Source of the DNA: Lama guanicoe
Lineage: Eukaryota
Assembly: GCA_013239625.1 (NCBI GenBank)
Contig: MU054925.1
Coordinates: 34,451,538 to 34,515,537 of the forward strand
DNA: 64,000 bases
Reading direction: 5' to 3'
Shown here: positions 199-52,010 of the stretch, one piece after another
How positions within the stretch are numbered: position 1 is the stretch's first letter
How the letters are laid out: each line of letters opens with the position of its first letter
Notes under the pieces: model-generated
The model's input: the letters and a program-made list of their open reading frames with translations, nothing else
Database searches by the model: none
Told to the model about the DNA's origin: nothing
Position numbers and translations under genes: made by a program

Positions 199-25419
<25,221 letters not shown>

Positions 25420-25540
25420 GCCGCCGCCCTCGGTCTCCTTGTCCTGCTCCCGCTCCCGCTGGCGGCTGGGCGGCCTGGTGGCCGGGCGCCCGGGGTGAGC
25501 GTGGGCAGGGAGACGGGCGGTGGGTCCCCCACAGAGCCTG

Positions 25541-25627
25541 GCTGACCGGAGGGCAGCCACGCTGCCTCCTTGACGTCTCAGCTCGAAGCCCCTGCGGTGA
25601 GCCGAGGCCGACCTCTCCTCCGTCAGC
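25541..25627 (+). promoter_or_regulatory. SECIS element (type II, non-canonical UUGAC/CGAC core) in the TXNRD3 3'UTR
   Basis: TGAC 25571-25574 and CGAC 25609-25612 form the quartet. Helix II is GTCTCAGCTC 25575-25584 : GAGCCGAGGC 25599-25608 (one A.C mismatch, one G.U). Unpaired AA at 25586-25587; mini-helix GCC:GGT; helix I GCTGAC(C)GGAGG : CCTCCGTCAGC. About 160 nt downstream of the Sec codon. Confidence 0.88.
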
Positions 25628-25995
25628 TTCCCTCTTCTCCGTCAGGGAGACCTGGTCCCCGCGGGACGCTTCCCGACCGACGTTCCAGGTTCCTAGTGTT
25701 TGTCCTCTTGCTCTGTTGGTTCTGTGGGAAATTGTCTCAGTCAGAAGCAGGCAGTGAAGTGGGCATCTTCACCGTCGGGGCCTGGACGCCCCCCCAACAG
25801 TGGCTGCGGGGTGGTAGGTGCGCTGGGCACACTGGGCTGCCGTGTGGGCGCTGACTCCTCCCGGCTTGCGTCTACCCCTCAGACCCCTCCTCCCACTCAC
25901 CTGGTTGCCGTGGTGACACAGCCCTGGACTGAGCAGGATATCCCACATCAGAGACAGATGCTTGAATTTCTGCTCATGTTGATCTCAAGAGGAAT

Positions 25996-26001
25996 ATTAA
26001 A
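25996..26001 (+). terminator. Candidate polyadenylation signal (ATTAAA) of TXNRD3
   Basis: First common PAS hexamer I saw after the SECIS, at the GC-rich to AT-rich transition, followed by CA and T/GT-rich sequence. Confidence 0.55.
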
Positions 26002-26919
26002 CAGTTTTCAATACAGTATTATGTGAAATCTAAATTCGGACTATTTAAAATGATTCAGTTCACAATTGATATACTTATAATCAGGTTCAGTAAATGACCA
26101 GGTGATGTTGGGAATTCCGTTTAAATTCGCATACCTGTTAGCATCTGCAAGGCCTTTGAGGTGGGAGGCCTGCCTGGGGTCCCTTTGGGAAGCCCATTTC
26201 CATGAGGAGCAGACCTCACAGCATCGAGTTGAGGCTTCTGGACGGTAATGCTCCCCTGAGCCCACGCCGCCCACTAGCCCCCCGCTCTGTGGTCAGAATT
26301 TCTTGGCATACATTTTAAACGAGCATGGAGGCCAGTAAACAGCTAGGGAGCGCCCTCTGTGGGCGAGGTGTTTCGCTGCCCTTGTGGGGACAGGCAGAGG
26401 AACCAGCGGAGTGGGGTCAGACACCCAAAATAACGGATGCAGAATCTGGTTCCTGGGTCGCCTTTTGTTGGGGAGGGAAGAGCTCAGGGTGCAGTCGCTG
26501 TGGAACTGAGGACGTGGTGACTCCCAGGATGTGGGCGGCGGGGAGGTAATTGAGCAGAGTTAACTGAAGCGGCTGTATTTGGGCTAAATCATGAGGGATG
26601 AATAGGATTTTAAAGATTAGAAGCAACGTGGAGACGGCTCTGGACTATGCTTTCAACACTTCAACAGAAATACTAGATAAAATCATTTTTTTACAGAAAG
26701 TTTTGTTACTGTATCGCTGAGCAACACACACAGCACAAGCACACACACACACACACAGAACCCAGATGATGTGAACCAGGGACCCTGGCTGTCCTGATGC
26801 TGCTTTGCACCAAGCGTGGGGTGGGAAAGCTGAACACAACAGCCGAGCCAGGCGAAGGCGATGGAGGCCTGTTGACCCGTCCAGCCCTGCGGACCCCACT
26901 GTGGTGGGCAGTCCCGCCC

Positions 26920-27335
26920 CACTGGTGACAGAAGCACAGACAGAAGGGATGGCACGTCATCTCTAGGATTAGGTCGTACAAGGACTGCAGCTTAAGTTTT
27001 GGCCGCTCACGTGCACTCTCCCCAGGTCGCTGGCTCTGGGAGAGGGCAGCTGCAATGCCATGGGGAGGCCCAGATGGCGAGGAACTGAAATCTCTGCCCA
27101 ACAGCAGGAAGCTCGGGCTGCTGGCATCTGTGCGGACAGGCCGGGAAGAGAAGCTTCTCCAGGAGCCTCCCTGCCCCCCCGACCCCTGGCCAGCAGCCTG
27201 CCTGCACGCCCTTAGAGACTTTGGGCCACAACAGTCCACTTGGGCCACTCTGAGTCCTGACCCTCAGAAACTATGAGATACTTACTTTTCAAGCCACTAA
27301 GTTTGGGGGTGATTTTTCCACTGATAGATAATATG
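26920..27335 (+). mobile_element. Old MLT1-family LTR
   Basis: ggcgaggaactgaa...ccaacagc and tcctgaccctcagaaactatgagata...ttcaagccactaagtttgggggtgattt end motif. Confidence 0.6.
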
Positions 27336-28769
27336 TTCACCAAGGAAAATTAAAACTAGTACAGATTCGATCAGATAACTGAAAGGTCCAAGGGACTCTT
27401 CCCTAGGGCTGAGAAAATAAACCCCTGCCGAGCTGGGATTTCAGCCAGAAGGCACTGGAGCTCAGGCTAGGCCTGAACTGCCTCATCCTCGTAGATACGG
27501 GGAGACCCAGGGGTCTCAGTAGGGGTCCTCTGGGTCAGTGTCTCGAGCTGTGGCCGTCCTGGGTCCCCGCTATGCCCCCTTGGAGTGTCTGCGGTGGTCA
27601 CAGCTCACGAGGGTCACTCAGAAACCCCTGTCTCGCTGAGCTGAGCTTGTTAAACGCTGCAAGGCAGGGCCTGGACCAGGCCTCAGCACCAGCTCAGGGG
27701 GAGTCAGGTGCTGTGGGGCTTGGACTGGGATCTGTCAGGGCGGCTAGGTGGCAGAGGTGAGTGAGTCTGGGCAGCTGTTGGTCGGAATGTGTCAGGCTGG
27801 TGGCTGGGGAGCGTCGGGGTCCCCAGAATCTGGGATGTCGGAGGCCACGCTGGGCTCCTGTACTGGGATTGTCTCTCGGAATGTGGAAGTCTGATTGTGC
27901 TCATGGTAGAACGGTTCCGGGTTCAATCATTTGTGCCGTGACTGCTTAGAGCATTTTGTATGTTTGTATGTCCAGCTCTTCAAGGGGTGTCTGTTTTACT
28001 TCCCGGTGGAGAACTGCCCGTGTTCGAGGCCAGGAGCGCAGGGGGCCTGCTCGGAATTCGCTGCGCGAGATCATCAGGTGCCCATGTGGCCTGCGCTCCT
28101 GCCTGCTAGAGTAGCGGACCTGACGCAGCGTCCGTCCGTAAACAAACTGGGGAAGCGGGAAACGACTGCCCTCGGACTGTGCGGCGCTTGGCCCCCAGGG
28201 GAAGGAGGATGTGAGGTGACCCCTGCAGTCGCCCCAACTTTCTGCATCAAAGTGGTTTTCAAACAGCAAGCATGAGGGAGGAACAAACAGCCTGGCATCT
28301 AGCTGAATTGAGGTGCAGATTGGATGTTGGGGAGACACAGGTGGAGGGGGCTTTGCAGGAAAAGGCCCCTGAAACCTGCAGCAGACCCCCTCGAGTTGGC
28401 TGCAGACTCCACCACACATCCTCAGAGTAAAATCCTAGAATGTCAGGCAACAATGACAAGGAGTTACCAGCTGAACACTTGGTCTCAGAAGGTGAGGAGA
28501 AATCCTGACTCTGACCACAGGGGGACCCTCAGTAAAGCCCCCGGACCTGAGTGGAAGCCCTGTAAGGAGTCATGCTCTCGTGATAGGGTTGGACCAGCCC
28601 TGGAGGCAAGTCTGCTTTGGACTCACACTAATAACAGAGTCTGAAATAGGCCTTAACGGGGCCAAGGTGACCCAGAAGTCCCAGCTGCGAAAGACACCAG
28701 AACCGTGCTGGTCAGCCTGGTAGCCGAGGTGGGGGCAGTGCAGTGGAGCAAGCAGTGAAAAGCAGACAG

Positions 28770-29340
28770 CGGAAGGGAAGATGTGACCTGTCTTTATTTG
28801 CAAATAACGTGATTGTGTACCCAGAAAATCCTAAGAAATCAACCAAAACACAAAACGAAGAAAAGACAATAACTACTAGAACTTCTAAGTGAACTTAGGA
28901 AGTCGAAGAATACAAAATCAACATACAAATATCCACTGAAAGATGAATAGATAAATTGCAGTGTATTCATAAAATACCGTTCAACAGTGAAAATGAATGA
29001 ACTGCTGACATCCAATGGCATGGATAAATCTCAAGACCATTTGGCTGCACAAAAGCTGGGCGAAAAACACACACTATTGTGTATAAAATTCTAGAAAAGA
29101 GCAACGTGGTTGACAGTGACAGAAAGCAGCTCAGGGGTTTCCTGGGGCTGAGGGCTGGTCGTGGGGAAGGTACACAGGACTTCCTGGAGGAACAGAAAGT
29201 TCCAGATCTTGTTTGTGGTGTGCCTAGATGGTTGCACGATTCGTTAGTTCATCAATGAGCCGCAAGTCAAGATGAATGCTTGAATGGGTGTGTTTTATTA
29301 TAGGTAAATTATACTTCAGAATCAACTTTTTTCAATAAAT
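28770..29340 (+). mobile_element. L1 ORF2 and 3'-end fragments
   Basis: tctttatttgcaaataacgtgattgtgtacccagaaaatcctaagaaatcaac; atggataaatctcaa; taaattatacttc. Confidence 0.6.
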
Positions 29341-30989
29341 GGAACATCTACTAAAGGGTAGGTGCTGACTGGGTGAGATGATGTGTGTCGAAAGAGGAAC
29401 TGAGGGGTCTCGAATGTTCCCAGCTAATGTGGCTGAGAAGAGGGGACTGAGGGAGGTGGAATGCAGGTAGAGGGGTGAGTCTAGTCGTGCATGTGTGTGT
29501 GCACATGCATATCTTGGGTTGGCATCTGTGATAATGGTCTCAGAATTTGCGCATAGGTAGACTGGTAATTTTATAAAGGCCGTTAATTAACGGACAGTGT
29601 GTGCCCTCAGCACTGACAGACCGCCCTGGGGTTCAGCTCCTCGCCGCAGGGTGGTGGGCTGCCAGGAACCGCGGCTGGGAAGAGAGGTGTAGGGTAGCGC
29701 CCCGCTCCACTGGCAGCTCCGTTTCTGCCCTTTGCACCACCACTTTGTACTCCTGTGGGTTGAACCAGGTCACCCAGATTTCTTTCCTTCCACTTCCCCC
29801 TAAATGCAAAGAAGAGACATGATTGTCACAGTTTGAGGAACAGTAAGCTTGGTTTCACTTCTTCATTGTGGCTTTTCCCGGAGGAAGCGTCCACCTCAGG
29901 GGGATGCGGGATGGGAGCTGGTACTGTTTGCGGGGTGTTGTAAGCCCTGGGTGAAATCACTGCAGGATGTTGCCAATGCTGTGTGGTCCGGGTGGGCCTT
30001 GTAAGTAGGAGCCCTCAGCGTACCCACTCATAGCAGACATGCTGTGACTGTTACTCCAGATCGCCTTCCGGAAACACGGTTTCCTCCCATATTTCCTCTG
30101 TGTGGTGTTAGTGACCACAGGCACCGTATCACAGATGCCAGCTCGAGATGTGCACATACGTGGTCCCTGCCCTGGAGTGCGTACAGCTGAGTGGGCATGC
30201 CAGGTGCAGATAAACAGTCGACTACAAAATTGGCCATCGACATGGAAGGGAAAAAATGTTGAATTCTGCATAAGCCAGAGTTACAGATTCATATGCTGAT
30301 GTAACGGAGCCATCTCAGTCACACTCAGATAGCAGACGAGGAAACCATGTCCACGGGGAGGGTGATGTGGGGAGCCAGTTTCACACCTGAGCCTCTTGAC
30401 TTCAAGTGTCTTCTTTCTCTGCCGCGTCAAAGCAGCAAGAGAGGATGCTAATGCATCCGTGCATTAGGGCTCTGTGATCAGGATGTTTTAGCCTCTTTCG
30501 GAGGAAGGGGCATAATTTGTCTGCTGTCTTCCACCTCATTAAAACTGCCACAAAAAGTGGATACAAGTTTGAGAGATGTATACCCTTACAGGCAGAAAAT
30601 TTCTCTACTGATGGAAATTGTAGCATCTCAGAGGGATCAGAGACCGTTCTGTGGGTTTCCGAGCAGTTCAAGTGAAGCCTTCAGCCACCGTGAGAACCCA
30701 GGACCGGCTTTTGTCCCACTGGGACGAACGTTGGGTGGGACACGGCTCGTCAGGAACTCGGGCTTTGCCTCATCTGCTCCTCAGCCACCTCGTGTCCCTC
30801 CAGGAACTCCGTGGCCTCTGGCTGCTCTCCCGCTGCTGTCAGCCTGGCTCTCGGGGCCGCCTGTCCAGTCTCCCCCTGGGGAAGGCCACACGTCCCCACG
30901 CGAGGCTTGGACCCATGTTTACATATTTTGATTTCTAGAAAGTTAGAACATTTTCCATTTGTGTTGTAGGCGACAAAACCAACTCAGTT

Positions 30990-31800
30990 TGATCTGTCTT
31001 GAGCACTTTTTTTTTCAGCATTTCAGGTCTGCTAGAGACTAATTTCCTCGACTTTTATCTGCCTGAAAATGTCTTTATTTCAGTTTCGTTTCTGAAGGGT
31101 GTTTTGGGCAGAGAAGTCTGCTTTGACATCCTTCCCCTCAGCACTTCAAGGAGCTCCTCCCGTCATCTCGCTTTTGTCTTTACTGGTGGGACGTCAGCCG
31201 TCACCCTTACTGTTTTCCCTGTGGATAATGTAGCCTTTTGCCCTCTTTGACCACCTGTAAGATTTTTTATTGAATTTTCAGCTGTTTGGCTCTGATGTGC
31301 CTGTGTATGCTTTTGTTTATGTTTATCCTGTTTGGGCTCTACTGAACTTCAGATATGTGGGTTGGTATCTTACACCAGTTTTGGAAAATTCTCAGCCGTA
31401 ATTTCCTCTAACGTTTCTTCTACCCATTCTCTTTCCTCCTCTTCTGGAATTCCAGTTACGAGTGCATTTAGACTTTTTATTGTCCTAGTATCGCAGACTC
31501 TGAGTTACTTTTCTCCCTGTAATTCAGTTTGGATGCTGTCTCGTCTTCTGGTCACTGATTCTTTCTCTGCTGTGTCCAATCTACTGATAAACCTATGAAT
31601 AGATCCTTAGTTTATGGAGTTGGACTTTTCCCATTTCCTGGGTTCTTGTTCATGTTTTCACCTCTCTCCTCAAATTCCCCATCTGTTCTCACATAGAATC
31701 CACCTTTTCTTTAGACCATTTAACACATTTACATAGTTTTAAGGCCTCTATTTCTAACACCTGAGCCATCTCTGTGTCTGCCTTTATTGAATTTTATGTC
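30990..31800 (-). mobile_element. Antisense old L1 fragment
   Basis: tttggaaaattctcagccgtaatttcctctaa, ttctggaattccagttacg, tctctgctgtgtccaatctactg. Confidence 0.6.
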
Positions 31801-50869: not shown

Positions 50870-52010
50870 GAAGCAAGCATCAAGCGGCGGGCAGGGCAGG
50901 GCAGGGGCCCGGCCCCCCGAGGCGGCTGCGCCCAGACCCGCCAGGGTCGAGCCAGTGAGCGGCCCCGGGCTAGCGCAGCCGCAGGTAGGAGGGGGCCGAG
51001 TAGTTGAAGAGCAGGAAGTCCATCCTGTAGAGGCCGAAGAGGCGCCGCTGGTAGAAGGGGCTGATGTCGCGGAAGAGGCGCGCGGCCCGGTCGCGGGTGG
51101 CGGCCGCCCGGGCCCGGGGCGGCGGCTCGGGGAAGCGCAGGCCGGGCGCGCCCACCAGGCCCAGCACGAAGGCCGCATCCTCCGCCAGCGTCTCGAACTT
51201 GCCCACCACGTCGTAGCNNNNNNNNNNNNNNNNNNNNNNNNNNNNNNNNNNNNNNNNNNNNNNNNNNNNNNNNNNNNNNNNNNNNNNNNNNNNNNNNNNN
51301 NNNNNNNNNNNNNNNNNNNNNNNNNNNNNNNNNNNNNNNNNNNNNNNNNNNNNNNNNCCTGGGCGCGGCCGCAGGCGCCTCACGATGCTCGTGCCGAAGC
51401 GGCGCTGGAAGGCCGCGCTGTAGGGCCGCTCCAGCTTGTTGCGGTAGGCGGACGCCAGGCGCTCGAAGGGCTCGCGCACGAAGAGGAAGGCCAGGTAGGC
51501 CCGCAGGCGCCGGTTGACCTCGGCCGGGCTGAAGTCGGCCAGCGAGCGTGGGCGGCCCGGCGCGTGNNNNNNNNNNNNNNNNNNNNNNNNNNNNNNNNNN
51601 NNNNNNNNNNNNNNNNNNNNNNNNNNNNNNNNNNNNNNNNNNNNNNNNNNNNNNNNNNNNNNNNNNNNNNNNNNNNNNNNNNNNNNNNNNGGGGGGCGCG
51701 CCGCTCAGCGCCAGCAGCACGCGCTTCCAGTTGGTGCAGGCCACCTTGGGCACGTAGCAGTAGAGCAGGCCGTGCGCGTCGTCCACCAGCACGTGCCGCA
51801 GGTCCTCGGGCTGCAGCAGGCGCTGCCGGCGCGTGTGGCGGCTGCAGGTGCGGCGCAGCAGGTCGCGCCGCTGCCGGTGCACCTCGGCCAGGGCGGAGCG
51901 CGGGCCCTGTGGCGACAGGAGCCGGGTCAGGGCTGTGCTGGGGCGGCACGCGCCGGGGGCCTGGGCGTGTGTTGGGGGGGGGATCTACCCTTGCCCGGGC
52001 GCGTGGGAGG
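50870..52010. other. CpG island over the CHST13 last exon
   Basis: Dense CpG and very high G+C; the assembly gaps fall in the most GC-rich part. Confidence 0.75.
50970..51906 (-). CDS. CHST13: Carbohydrate sulfotransferase 13 (chondroitin 4-O-sulfotransferase 3), last coding exon, interrupted by two N gaps
   Basis: Minus-strand acceptor gtcgccacag|GGC. Translation [17 protein letters not shown]...[19 protein letters not shown] (5'-PSB) ...[19 protein letters not shown] (3'-PB) ...[14 protein letters not shown]...[18 protein letters not shown] gaps at 51218-51357 and 51567-51690. Confidence 0.94.

What the first reader, a model, noticed from the sequence alone, without database searches (positions are those of the whole stretch)
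25541..25627. Non-canonical TXNRD3 SECIS: UUGAC core and a three-way junction with a switchable side hairpin
Seen: the base 5' of the UGAN quartet is U (TTGAC 25570-25574) rather than the usual A of AUGA. Helix II, the apical AA and the mini-helix are well formed. Between helix I and the core sits an extra perfect hairpin GCAGC-CAC-GCTGC (25553-25565), so the usual internal loop becomes a three-way junction. GGAGG (25548-25552) has two possible partners: CCTCC 25617-25621 (helix I closed) or CCTCC 25565-25569 (side hairpin extended, helix I broken). Known: SECISBP2 binds the kink-turn, and its context affects UGA read-through; from memory the human TXNRD3 SECIS is also atypical at this base. 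Inference: two alternative folds could tune the ratio of full-length Sec enzyme to a product truncated at Gly-Cys.
Basis: partly seen in the sequence, partly recalled or inferred. Interest (0 to 1): 0.75.

Follow-up and report, generated by a model that had tools for sequence, protein, structure and literature searches.

The report
TXNRD3 SECIS with odd core base
This is very probably the ordinary selenocysteine-insertion hairpin of a thioredoxin reductase 3 gene; it has an unusual U next to its core and a small extra hairpin, and folding calculations give no support for the proposed structural switch.

Summary
The sequence is as described. A TXNRD-type last exon ends ...Gly-Cys-UGA-Gly-UAA (UGA 25411-25413). 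160 nt downstream lies a type II SECIS-shaped hairpin, 25541-25627. It has UGA/GA at the core, 15 positions on each strand up to an unpaired AAG, a 2-bp mini-helix and an 11-bp helix I.

My pattern finds it once in the 601-nt 3'UTR, in 0 of 3000 shuffles, and nowhere else on either strand of the window. I found no AUGA alternative up to 31000.

The departures from consensus are real. U25570 stands where A/G is usual. The 3' core reads CGAC, not KGAW. A perfect 5-bp hairpin (25553-25565) sits in the 5' internal loop. Rfam gives no SECIS hit at E<=10.

The "switch" is not supported. The alternative pairing needs a bulged G and costs 2.4 kcal/mol. Its predicted occupancy is 1-2%. A hairpin of this kind arises by chance in 1-3% of such segments.

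Conservation and expression could not be tested.

Verdict: a genuine, probably weak SECIS. It is a slightly atypical member of a known kind, of modest interest.

The parts
25351..25419 (+). Last coding exon piece of the TXNRD3-type gene: [24 protein letters not shown]-stop. The Sec codon UGA is at 25411-25413 and the TAA stop at 25417-25419.
   Evidence: An AG acceptor lies at 25349-25350. The preceding exon, 24865-24990, matches Pyr_redox_dim and TXNRD1 residues 436-477.
25541..25552 (+). Helix I, 5' strand: GCUGAC (25541-46), bulged C25547, GGAGG (25548-52).
   Evidence: Pairs with 25617-25627. Pair probabilities are 0.98-1.0 for the outer part (0.53 for C25546-G25622) and 0.91-0.94 for the inner part (0.45 for G25552-C25617).
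25553..25565 (+). Side hairpin GCAGC-CAC-GCUGC in the 5' side of internal loop 1.
   Evidence: Pair probabilities are 0.98-1.0. It is worth 9.3 kcal/mol against an open loop (-39.5 vs -30.2). By chance it occurs in 1.3-2.9% of such segments.
25566..25570 (+). Remaining 5' internal loop CUCCU, ending in the non-consensus U25570. U25567 is the 'T 3 nt before ATGA' / 'Y at -4' position.
   Evidence: Consensus from PMC2647825 and PMC2761289 section 15.
25571..25574 (+). 5' half of the non-Watson-Crick quartet, UGAC.
25575..25585 (+). Helix II, 5' strand: GUCUC, A25580 (opposite C25603), GCUCG.
   Evidence: Pair probabilities 0.86-1.0.
25586..25597 (+). Apex: unpaired AA (25586-87; the AAG motif with G25588), 2-bp helix 3 GC/GC (25588-89 / 25594-95), loop CCCU, unpaired GG (25596-97).
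   Evidence: mini-stem probability 0.91.
25598..25608 (+). Helix II, 3' strand: UGAGC, C25603, GAGGC.
25609..25612 (+). 3' half of the quartet, CGAC. The GA (25610-11) is present; both flanks are C instead of K and W.
   Evidence: Consensus KGAW from PMC3753652 and PMC2647825.
25613..25627 (+). 3' internal loop CUCU (25613-16) and helix I 3' strand CCUCC + GUCAGC (25617-27).
25631..25645 (+). Second copy of the helix I 3' strand (CCTCTTCTCCGTCAG), 14 of 15 bases identical to 25612-25626 and offset by 19 nt.
   Evidence: Predicted use as a pairing partner is 0.0.
25996..26001 (+). ATTAAA, the only poly(A)-signal hexamer in 25420-26700. It implies a 3'UTR of about 600 nt.

Best explanation
25541-25627 is the working SECIS element (type II / form 2) of the TXNRD3 orthologue. 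The tandem G.A/A.G pairs formed by UGA (25571-73) and GA (25610-11) make the kink-turn-like core that SECISBP2 binds. Helix II sets the AAG motif 15 positions above the core. The complex brings eEFSec and Sec-tRNA to the ribosome, so that UGA 25411, 160 nt upstream, is read as the penultimate selenocysteine instead of a stop.

The element departs from consensus at U25570 (usually A, sometimes G) and at both C flanks of the 3' GA. It also carries a 13-nt hairpin in the 5' side of internal loop 1.

My reading of the hairpin (inferred, not shown) is a tolerated insertion that folds on itself. That folding keeps the effective internal loop at 5 + 4 nt, the usual size. I do not read it as a switch.

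The element is likely a weak SECIS, also by inference. It has the T at -4 together with a G-C pair just above the quartet, the combination that marks the weak human class. The human 'Trxr3' SECIS itself falls in that class.
For: Gene:
- The last exon ends GC-UGA-G-TAA.
- Ten exon pieces with TXNRD motifs lie at 1865-25419, with no stop inside the conserved parts.
- Exons 9902-10075 and 24865-24990 hit Pyr_redox and Pyr_redox_dim.
- Their best PDB matches are mammalian TXNRD1, at 41 of 58 and 33 of 42 identical residues (my count on the match lines). TXNRD2 scores lower (60.9 and 50.7 bits against 83 and 72.6).
- This fits the third, TXNRD1-like paralogue. Mammals have three TXNRD genes (PMC13134290 and PMC9352919, passages).
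- A Sulfotransfer_2 gene lies on the minus strand about 25 kb downstream. That matches my recollection of the human order TXNRD3-C3orf22-CHST13.

Element:
- It is the only SECIS-pattern hit in the 3'UTR and in the whole window, with 0 of 3000 shuffles giving a hit.
- No AUGA candidate was found in 25420-31000.
- All helices are in the minimum-energy and centroid folds, with pair probabilities 0.86-1.0.
- Helix II has 15 positions on each strand. The literature gives 14-15 bp (PMC2761289) and 11-16 bp (PMC2647825).
- G at position 1 with C at 1', and U at -4, fit the extended consensus.
- Only UGA/GA is said to be invariable.

Weak class: PMC2761289 abstract, passages and section 15.

Sequence correctness: run X1, not flagged as a possible source of this DNA, holds 1.00 of the 78 sampled 31-mers of 25330-26060.
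Against: - Rfam's covariance models give no SECIS hit at gathering score. They give none at E<=10 on 3 kb, 181 nt or 59 nt around the element. I had no positive control for that model.
- U at -1 is outside the published 'A' or 'R'. CGAC is outside KGAW.
- The energy z-score is only -1.77.
- In a 341-nt context, the predicted minimum-energy fold swallows the element, and SECIS pairs fall to 0.0-0.05.
- UGA-to-core is 160 nt, under the 207-5207 nt range quoted for mammalian selenoproteins. It is above the 51-111 nt experimental minimum (PMC3316567 section 14).
- There is no conservation, expression, binding or recoding evidence.
Confidence: 0.8

Rival explanations
1. The element is a bistable three-way junction. 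GGAGG (25548-52) alternates between the 3' CCUCC (helix I closed, SECIS active) and the 5' CCUCC (side hairpin extended, helix I opened). This sets the ratio of full-length Sec enzyme to a product ending at Gly-Cys.
For: Both partner sequences exist. [quoted passage not shown] A rearrangement there would therefore matter. G25552 does toggle between two partners (0.45 / 0.54).
Against: - The alternative needs G25553 bulged and is 2.4 kcal/mol less stable.
- Its pairs have probability 0.004-0.018 in 87-nt and 181-nt contexts, at 37 and 33 C, and with a second parameter set.
- The outer 6 bp of helix I stay closed in both folds, so helix I is not 'broken'.
- CCUCC-like runs are common in this pyrimidine-rich, 69-70% G+C stretch.
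- No trigger is known.
- I found no paper linking a SECIS to a three-way junction (1 hit, in an unrelated reference title).
Confidence: 0.06
2. The element is a SECIS in decay. U25570, the C flanks and the 13-nt insertion are lineage-specific, mildly harmful changes in a dispensable, testis-specific gene. Much of the protein then ends at Gly-Cys for want of recoding, not by regulation.
For: There are three departures from consensus in one element, and no Rfam hit. First-stage notes on this window (unchecked) report a Tyr-to-Cys change in TXNRD3, whose SLNWGCRL I saw. They also report a premature stop in the neighbouring C3orf22 orthologue.
Against: - The invariant UGA/GA, the spacing, the AAG motif and helix I are all intact.
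- The TGA codon and the conserved exon motifs are intact.
- Only UGA/GA is invariable in real SECIS elements.
- Weak SECIS elements are normal in working human genes.
Confidence: 0.1
3. This is a chance hairpin. The true SECIS is elsewhere, for instance a CC-type element further downstream or in an unrecognised 3' exon.
For: PMC2761289 (figure 1 legend) says the human 'Trxr3' SECIS has CC in place of AA, which this element does not. Weak CC-type candidates exist at 26156 and 26872.
Against: - 0 of 3000 shuffles give such a pattern.
- The CC candidates are branched, poorly paired, and start with UUGA as well.
- Both lie beyond the only poly(A) signal found (25996).
- PMC3316567 section 14 finds CC only in SelM and SelO among vertebrate SECIS elements.
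Confidence: 0.03

Closest known systems
Eukaryotic SECIS element, type II (form 2), as in mammalian thioredoxin reductase mRNAs
   Same: It sits in the 3'UTR after a penultimate UGA. It has UGA/GA tandem sheared pairs, a helix II of 15 positions, an unpaired AAG, a short helix 3, and a helix I that closes an internal loop. G/C at positions 1/1' and Y at -4 also fit. TR2 and TR3 were type II in all species surveyed (PMC2647825, passage).
   Different: U instead of A/R at -1. CGAC instead of KGAW. A 13-nt hairpin in the 5' side of internal loop 1. No match to Rfam at E<=10.
Human 'Trxr3' SECIS and the weak class of human SECIS elements (Latreche et al. 2009, PMC2761289)
   Same: It is presumably the orthologous gene. 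It shares the pair of features that mark the weak class, a T 3 nt before the (A)UGA and a G-C pair just above the quartet (section 15). My mapping of their '+2' onto G25575-C25608 is an inference.
   Different: The human element is described with CC in the apical motif; this one has AA. The human letters are in figures that are not held, so the -1 base and the internal loop cannot be compared.
GUGA-type SECIS elements (green algae, sponges; PMC3473315)
   Same: They are working SECIS elements in which the base before UGA is not A.
   Different: There the base is G, still a purine. Here it is U. I found no paper giving UUGA or TTGA in a SECIS. One search gave 4 hits, all unrelated by title. One search gave 0 hits.
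k-junction (kink-turn elaborated into a three-way junction; TPP riboswitches)
   Same: It is a kink-turn-type core that forms part of a three-helix junction.
   Different: In k-junctions the extra helix is on the non-bulged strand (PMC10573300, abstract as shown in the listing). Here the hairpin is on the strand that carries the loop and UGA. No tertiary evidence is available.

Membership tests
Eukaryotic SECIS element | Lies in the 3'UTR downstream of an in-frame UGA of a selenoprotein gene | tested here: met
   The core lies 160 nt after UGA 25411 of a TXNRD-type last exon. This exceeds the 51-111 nt minimum.
Eukaryotic SECIS element | UGA on the 5' strand and GA on the 3' strand at the base of helix II (tandem G.A/A.G). 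The source calls this the only invariable part. | tested here: met
   UGA 25571-73 and GA 25610-11 are in register. PMC2647825 passage. The geometry itself is not testable here.
Eukaryotic SECIS element | Unpaired A (or R) directly 5' of UGA. This is consensus, not invariant. | tested here: not met
   U25570. Consensus.
Eukaryotic SECIS element | 3' half of the quartet reads KGAW. These classes are seen in 70% or more of elements. | tested here: not met
   CGAC 25609-12. Consensus.
Eukaryotic SECIS element | Fixed distance from the core to an unpaired AAR (or CC) motif: helix II of 14-15 (11-16) pairs with little bending | tested here: met
   25571-85 against 25598-612, 15 positions on each strand, one A/C mismatch, then AAG 25586-88.
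Eukaryotic SECIS element | Helix I closes internal loop 1 | tested here: met
   6 + 5 bp with one bulged C, probability 0.91-1.0 except at the two junction pairs.
Eukaryotic SECIS element | Internal loop 1 of ordinary size (8-9 nt in the two elements dissected in PMC2761289) | tested here: inconclusive
   The loop is 18 + 4 nt as sequence and 5 + 4 nt if the side hairpin forms.
Eukaryotic SECIS element | Type II apex: helix 3 above the AAR bulge | tested here: met
   Two G-C pairs, 25588-89 / 25594-95, probability 0.91, with a 4-nt loop.
Eukaryotic SECIS element | Match to a curated covariance model (Rfam) | tested here: not met
   No SECIS family was listed at gathering score or at E<=10. The sensitivity of that model for mammalian TXNRD elements is unknown to me. 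SECISearch3 was not available.
Eukaryotic SECIS element | Binds SECISBP2 and supports UGA recoding | not testable with these tools
   Needs EMSA and reporter assays.
Eukaryotic SECIS element | Conserved in orthologous 3'UTRs with compensatory changes in the helices | not testable with these tools
Relatives look-up was blank.
Bistable RNA switch | Two mutually exclusive folds of comparable stability | tested here: not met
   ddG is 2.4 kcal/mol. The alternative pairs have probability 0.004-0.018. This is thermodynamic prediction only.
k-junction | The additional helix is on the non-bulged strand of a kink turn | tested here: not met
   The hairpin 25553-65 is on the UGA-bearing (bulged) strand. 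Definition taken from the listing.

The most novel reading that the evidence does not exclude
U at -1 together with a self-folding hairpin in internal loop 1 is a conserved, TXNRD3-specific SECIS architecture, not a quirk of one lineage. It would set a deliberately low or testis-tuned recoding efficiency. It might also explain why consensus-based tools and the older human 'Trxr3' annotation (CC apex, weak activity) disagree with later surveys. If so, this would be a first natural pyrimidine at the -1 position and a three-helix SECIS core region.
Probability: 0.12. Interest if true: 0.55.

Novelty: new member of a known kind. Interest (0 to 1): 0.3.

Why it matters
Rules for finding selenoprotein genes lean on the (A/G)UGA...AA...GA pattern. 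A working SECIS with U at that base and a hairpin inside the internal loop would show the rules are too strict. It would also give a natural test case for how the region next to the kink-turn sets recoding strength, which Latreche et al. named as the main determinant without explaining it. If it is only a lineage quirk, the finding is an ordinary annotation: the SECIS of TXNRD3.

Tried and rejected
Tried, with no useful result:

1. Rfam, run four ways, gave no SECIS hit. The few listed hits at E 0.12-9.4 (mir-325, HOTTIP, MEG8, KatA thermometer and others) all score far below their gathering scores, and I take them as chance.

2. My first constrained scan did not enforce its constraint. I discard it and replace it.

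3. Literature on the -1 base or on the TXNRD3 SECIS.
- PMC5397149, PMC13134290, PMC4466519, PMC9352919, PMC12628022 and PMC4615290 were read as passages only.
- In PMC9352919 the word SECIS occurs 0 times. In PMC12628022 TXNRD3 occurs 0 times. In PMC4615290 all my gene terms occur 0 times. None of the six says anything on either point.
- The two classic mutagenesis and structure papers (PMC1369597, PMC102651) are not held.
- Supplements are closed and figures are not held. SECISaln's Supplementary Table 1, SECISearch3's Supplements S1-S4 and Latreche's figures 1B and 6B may hold the -1 base frequencies and the human TXNRD3 letters. I could not see them.

4. The relatives look-up in the scan's notes was blank.

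5. Three further energy-parameter sets were loaded and gave identical numbers. I count them as one alternative set only.

Considered and rejected:
- An alternative helix I using GCUG 25561-64 with CAGC 25624-27. It has only 4 bp (by eye).
- Use of the duplicated 3' strand 25631-45. Its predicted probability is 0.0.
- The other GA, at 25604-05, as the core. It would leave a 5-bp helix II.
- The k-junction, because the extra helix is on the wrong strand.

The joined (spliced) protein model was not built or searched. Exons were searched one by one.

Full report
WHAT IS THERE.

Reading 25301-25900 and the ORF list shows a last coding exon beginning after an AG at 25349-50. It encodes [20 protein letters not shown], then TGA (25411-13), GGC and TAA (25417-19). 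This is the Gly-Cys-Sec-Gly end of a mammalian thioredoxin reductase.

The preceding exon (24865-24990) matches Pyr_redox_dim, and an exon at 9902-10075 matches Pyr_redox. Their best solved relatives are mammalian TXNRD1. Identity is 41 of 58 and 33 of 42 residues (my count on the match lines). TXNRD2 scores lower. Human and rat TXNRD1 hit with the same scores, so this is not TXNRD1 itself but the TXNRD1-like third paralogue.

Mammals have three TXNRD genes (PMC13134290 and PMC9352919, passages). Motif searches of the three forward frames found further exon pieces at 1865-2047, 3581-3724, 7706-8032, 15051-15341, 17873-18133 and 22174-22470. None has a stop inside its conserved part.

A Sulfotransfer_2 gene lies on the minus strand about 25 kb downstream. 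A first-stage note places a C3orf22 orthologue between the two (unchecked). That is the order I recall for the human TXNRD3 locus; this is recalled, not tested. I did not build or search a joined protein.

THE ELEMENT.

From 25541 to 25627 the parts are as follows:
- Helix I: GCUGAC/GUCAGC and GGAGG/CCUCC, with C25547 bulged.
- Side hairpin: GCAGC-CAC-GCUGC (25553-65).
- 5' loop: CUCCU, ending in U25570.
- Quartet: UGAC (25571-74) over CGAC (25609-12).
- Helix II: 5 bp, an A/C mismatch (25580/25603), then 5 bp.
- Apex: unpaired AA (25586-87), a 2-bp helix 3, loop CCCU, unpaired GG.
- 3' loop: CUCU.

From the U of UGA to the last helix II pair there are 15 positions on each strand. This matches the 14-15 bp of Latreche et al. 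(PMC2761289, passage) and lies within the 11-16 bp of SECISaln (PMC2647825, passage). G25575-C25608 and U25567 fit SECISaln's extra consensus positions: G at 1, Y at 1', and Y at -4 in type II.

IS IT MORE THAN CHANCE?
- A simple pattern asks for UGA, 10-13 nt, AA, GA in register, and at least 10 helix II pairs. It finds this site once in the real 601-nt UTR, in 0 of 3000 dinucleotide shuffles, once on the + strand of the whole window and never on the - strand (for the listing).
- A second scan with enforced helix II pairs found no AUGA candidate between 25420 and 31000. The other candidates there (27636 CUGA; 26872 and 26156, UUGA with CC) are branched or poorly paired.
- By energy alone the 87 nt are not remarkable: z = -1.77, with 9 of 200 shuffles as good. 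The stretch is 70% G+C.

DEPARTURES FROM CONSENSUS.

Published consensus gives UGAN/KGAW, an unpaired A 5' of UGAN (elsewhere 'the conserved R'), and a run of As. Only UGA/GA is invariable (PMC2647825; PMC3753652; PMC3473315). Here the -1 base is U and the 3' half is CGAC.

Full-text searches for SECIS with UUGA gave 4 papers, all unrelated by title. Searches with TTGA gave 0. Within that library I find no description of a U at this place.

Rfam lists no SECIS family at its gathering score, nor at E<=10 on 3 kb, 181 nt or 59 nt. I had no known SECIS to use as a positive control, so I treat this as a failed diagnostic and not as a refutation.

THE SIDE HAIRPIN AND THE 'SWITCH'.
- The hairpin is predicted with pair probability 0.98-1.0. 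It is worth 9.3 kcal/mol against an open loop (-39.5 vs -30.2).
- With the hairpin formed, the internal loop is 5 + 4 nt. That is similar to the 4 + 5 loop of the strong SelX element described by Latreche et al..
It has to share C25565 with the hairpin, so G25553 must bulge and one hairpin pair is lost. The best such fold is -37.1 kcal/mol, about 49:1 against it.
- Its pairs have probability 0.005-0.018 in the 87-nt and 181-nt contexts. They reach 0.004-0.015 at 33 and 37 C and with a second parameter set when core and helix II are held fixed.
- The outer 6 bp of helix I persist in both folds. Only G25552 really toggles, 0.45 with C25617 and 0.54 with C25566.
- A perfect hairpin of 5 bp or more occurs by chance in 2.9% of shuffled 18-mers of this composition, and in 1.3% of shuffles of the segment itself.
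- A caution on all of this: in a 341-nt context the predicted fold is entirely different, and SECIS pairs drop to 0.0-0.05. The energy model knows nothing of G.A pairs or of SECISBP2.

HOW IT MOST LIKELY WORKS.
- Shown: the sequence anatomy of a type II SECIS, at the right place, in a gene that needs one.
[quoted passage not shown] The internal loop and helix II set recoding strength (PMC2761289).
- Inferred: this element recodes UGA 25411.
- Inferred: it is weak. It has the T at -4 together with the G-C pair above the quartet, found in 100% of weak human elements against 25% and 12.5% of moderate and strong ones (section 15). The human 'Trxr3' SECIS is one of six weak elements.
- Inferred: the hairpin is a tolerated insertion that tucks itself away.
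- From general kink-turn knowledge (recalled): the base at this position stacks on the non-canonical helix, so a pyrimidine should weaken folding but not abolish it.

WHAT COULD NOT BE DONE.
- No mammalian nucleotide collection is reachable, so conservation and covariation of the U, the hairpin and the CCUCC copies are untested.
- The look-up of sequencing runs showed that DNA runs of five coded organisms hold 0.95-1.00 of the 78 sampled words of 25330-26060.
- One of them, X1, is not flagged as a possible source and holds 1.00. This makes an assembly error at 25570 unlikely. My estimate is about a 3% chance that a given base is covered by no sampled word.
- Five RNA runs and one run guessed to be RNA hold 0.26-0.29 of the words. 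They come from four studies, several labelled reproductive system. This fits expression of part of the stretch in reproductive tissue and no more.
The transcript end, the RNA base at 25570 and the covered part are therefore unknown.
- The only poly(A) hexamer in 25420-26700 is ATTAAA at 25996.

COMPARISON AND VERDICT.

It works like a SECIS, and I file it as one: the type II SECIS of TXNRD3.
- It meets the one invariable feature and all the spacing and helix features.
- It fails two consensus positions and the Rfam model.
- It is not a k-junction, because there the extra helix is on the non-bulged strand (listing).
- It is not a bistable switch by the energy test.
- Latreche et al. flag the human Trxr3 element for CC in the apex. 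This element has AA. Mariotti et al. find CC only in SelM and SelO (PMC3316567 section 14). I cannot resolve that disagreement without the figures.
- A first-stage note on another piece of this genome reports a GUGA core in GPX4 (unchecked). If that is true, non-A bases at -1 may be less rare in this lineage. It is a lead only.

Scores:
- Interest 0.3.
- Probability that the unusual architecture is conserved and functional about 0.12.
- Probability that the element is the real SECIS about 0.8.

Noticed in passing
window 25198-25270, minus strand: A tRNA-Ala(AGC)-like sequence lies in the last intron of the TXNRD3-type gene. Rfam tRNA scores 44.4 bits with non-standard acceptor pairs marked, and ARAGORN calls tRNA-Ala. 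It is probably a tRNA-derived SINE or a tRNA pseudogene, not a working gene.
   Followed up: partly
window 25612-25626 and 25631-25645: Direct repeat with 14 of 15 bases identical, offset by 19 nt. It duplicates the 3' internal loop and the 3' strand of SECIS helix I. The second copy is not predicted to pair with the 5' strand.
   Followed up: partly
window 50973-51215 and 51691-51882, minus strand: Two N-free pieces of a Sulfotransfer_2 (PF03567) gene, E 1.1e-12 and 1.7e-10. It is probably the CHST13 orthologue; that name is recalled from human gene order. The gene is interrupted by masked runs, which I did not touch.
   Followed up: partly
window 7706-8032, + strand: A TXNRD exon piece reads ...[16 protein letters not shown].... 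This is the Cys that a first-stage note (s1-861189) reports in place of a Tyr.
   Followed up: no
window 25420-26150: Composition breaks sharply inside the 3'UTR: 69% G+C for 25420-25900 and 38% for 25900-26150, near the ATTAAA. In a 341-nt context the G+C-rich part is predicted to form a long alternative duplex that competes with the SECIS.
   Followed up: no
another piece of the same genome (note s1-861167): A first-stage note says the GPX4 SECIS of this genome has GUGA instead of AUGA. With the U seen here, that would make two selenoprotein genes with a non-A base before the core in one genome. I have not seen that sequence.
   Followed up: no
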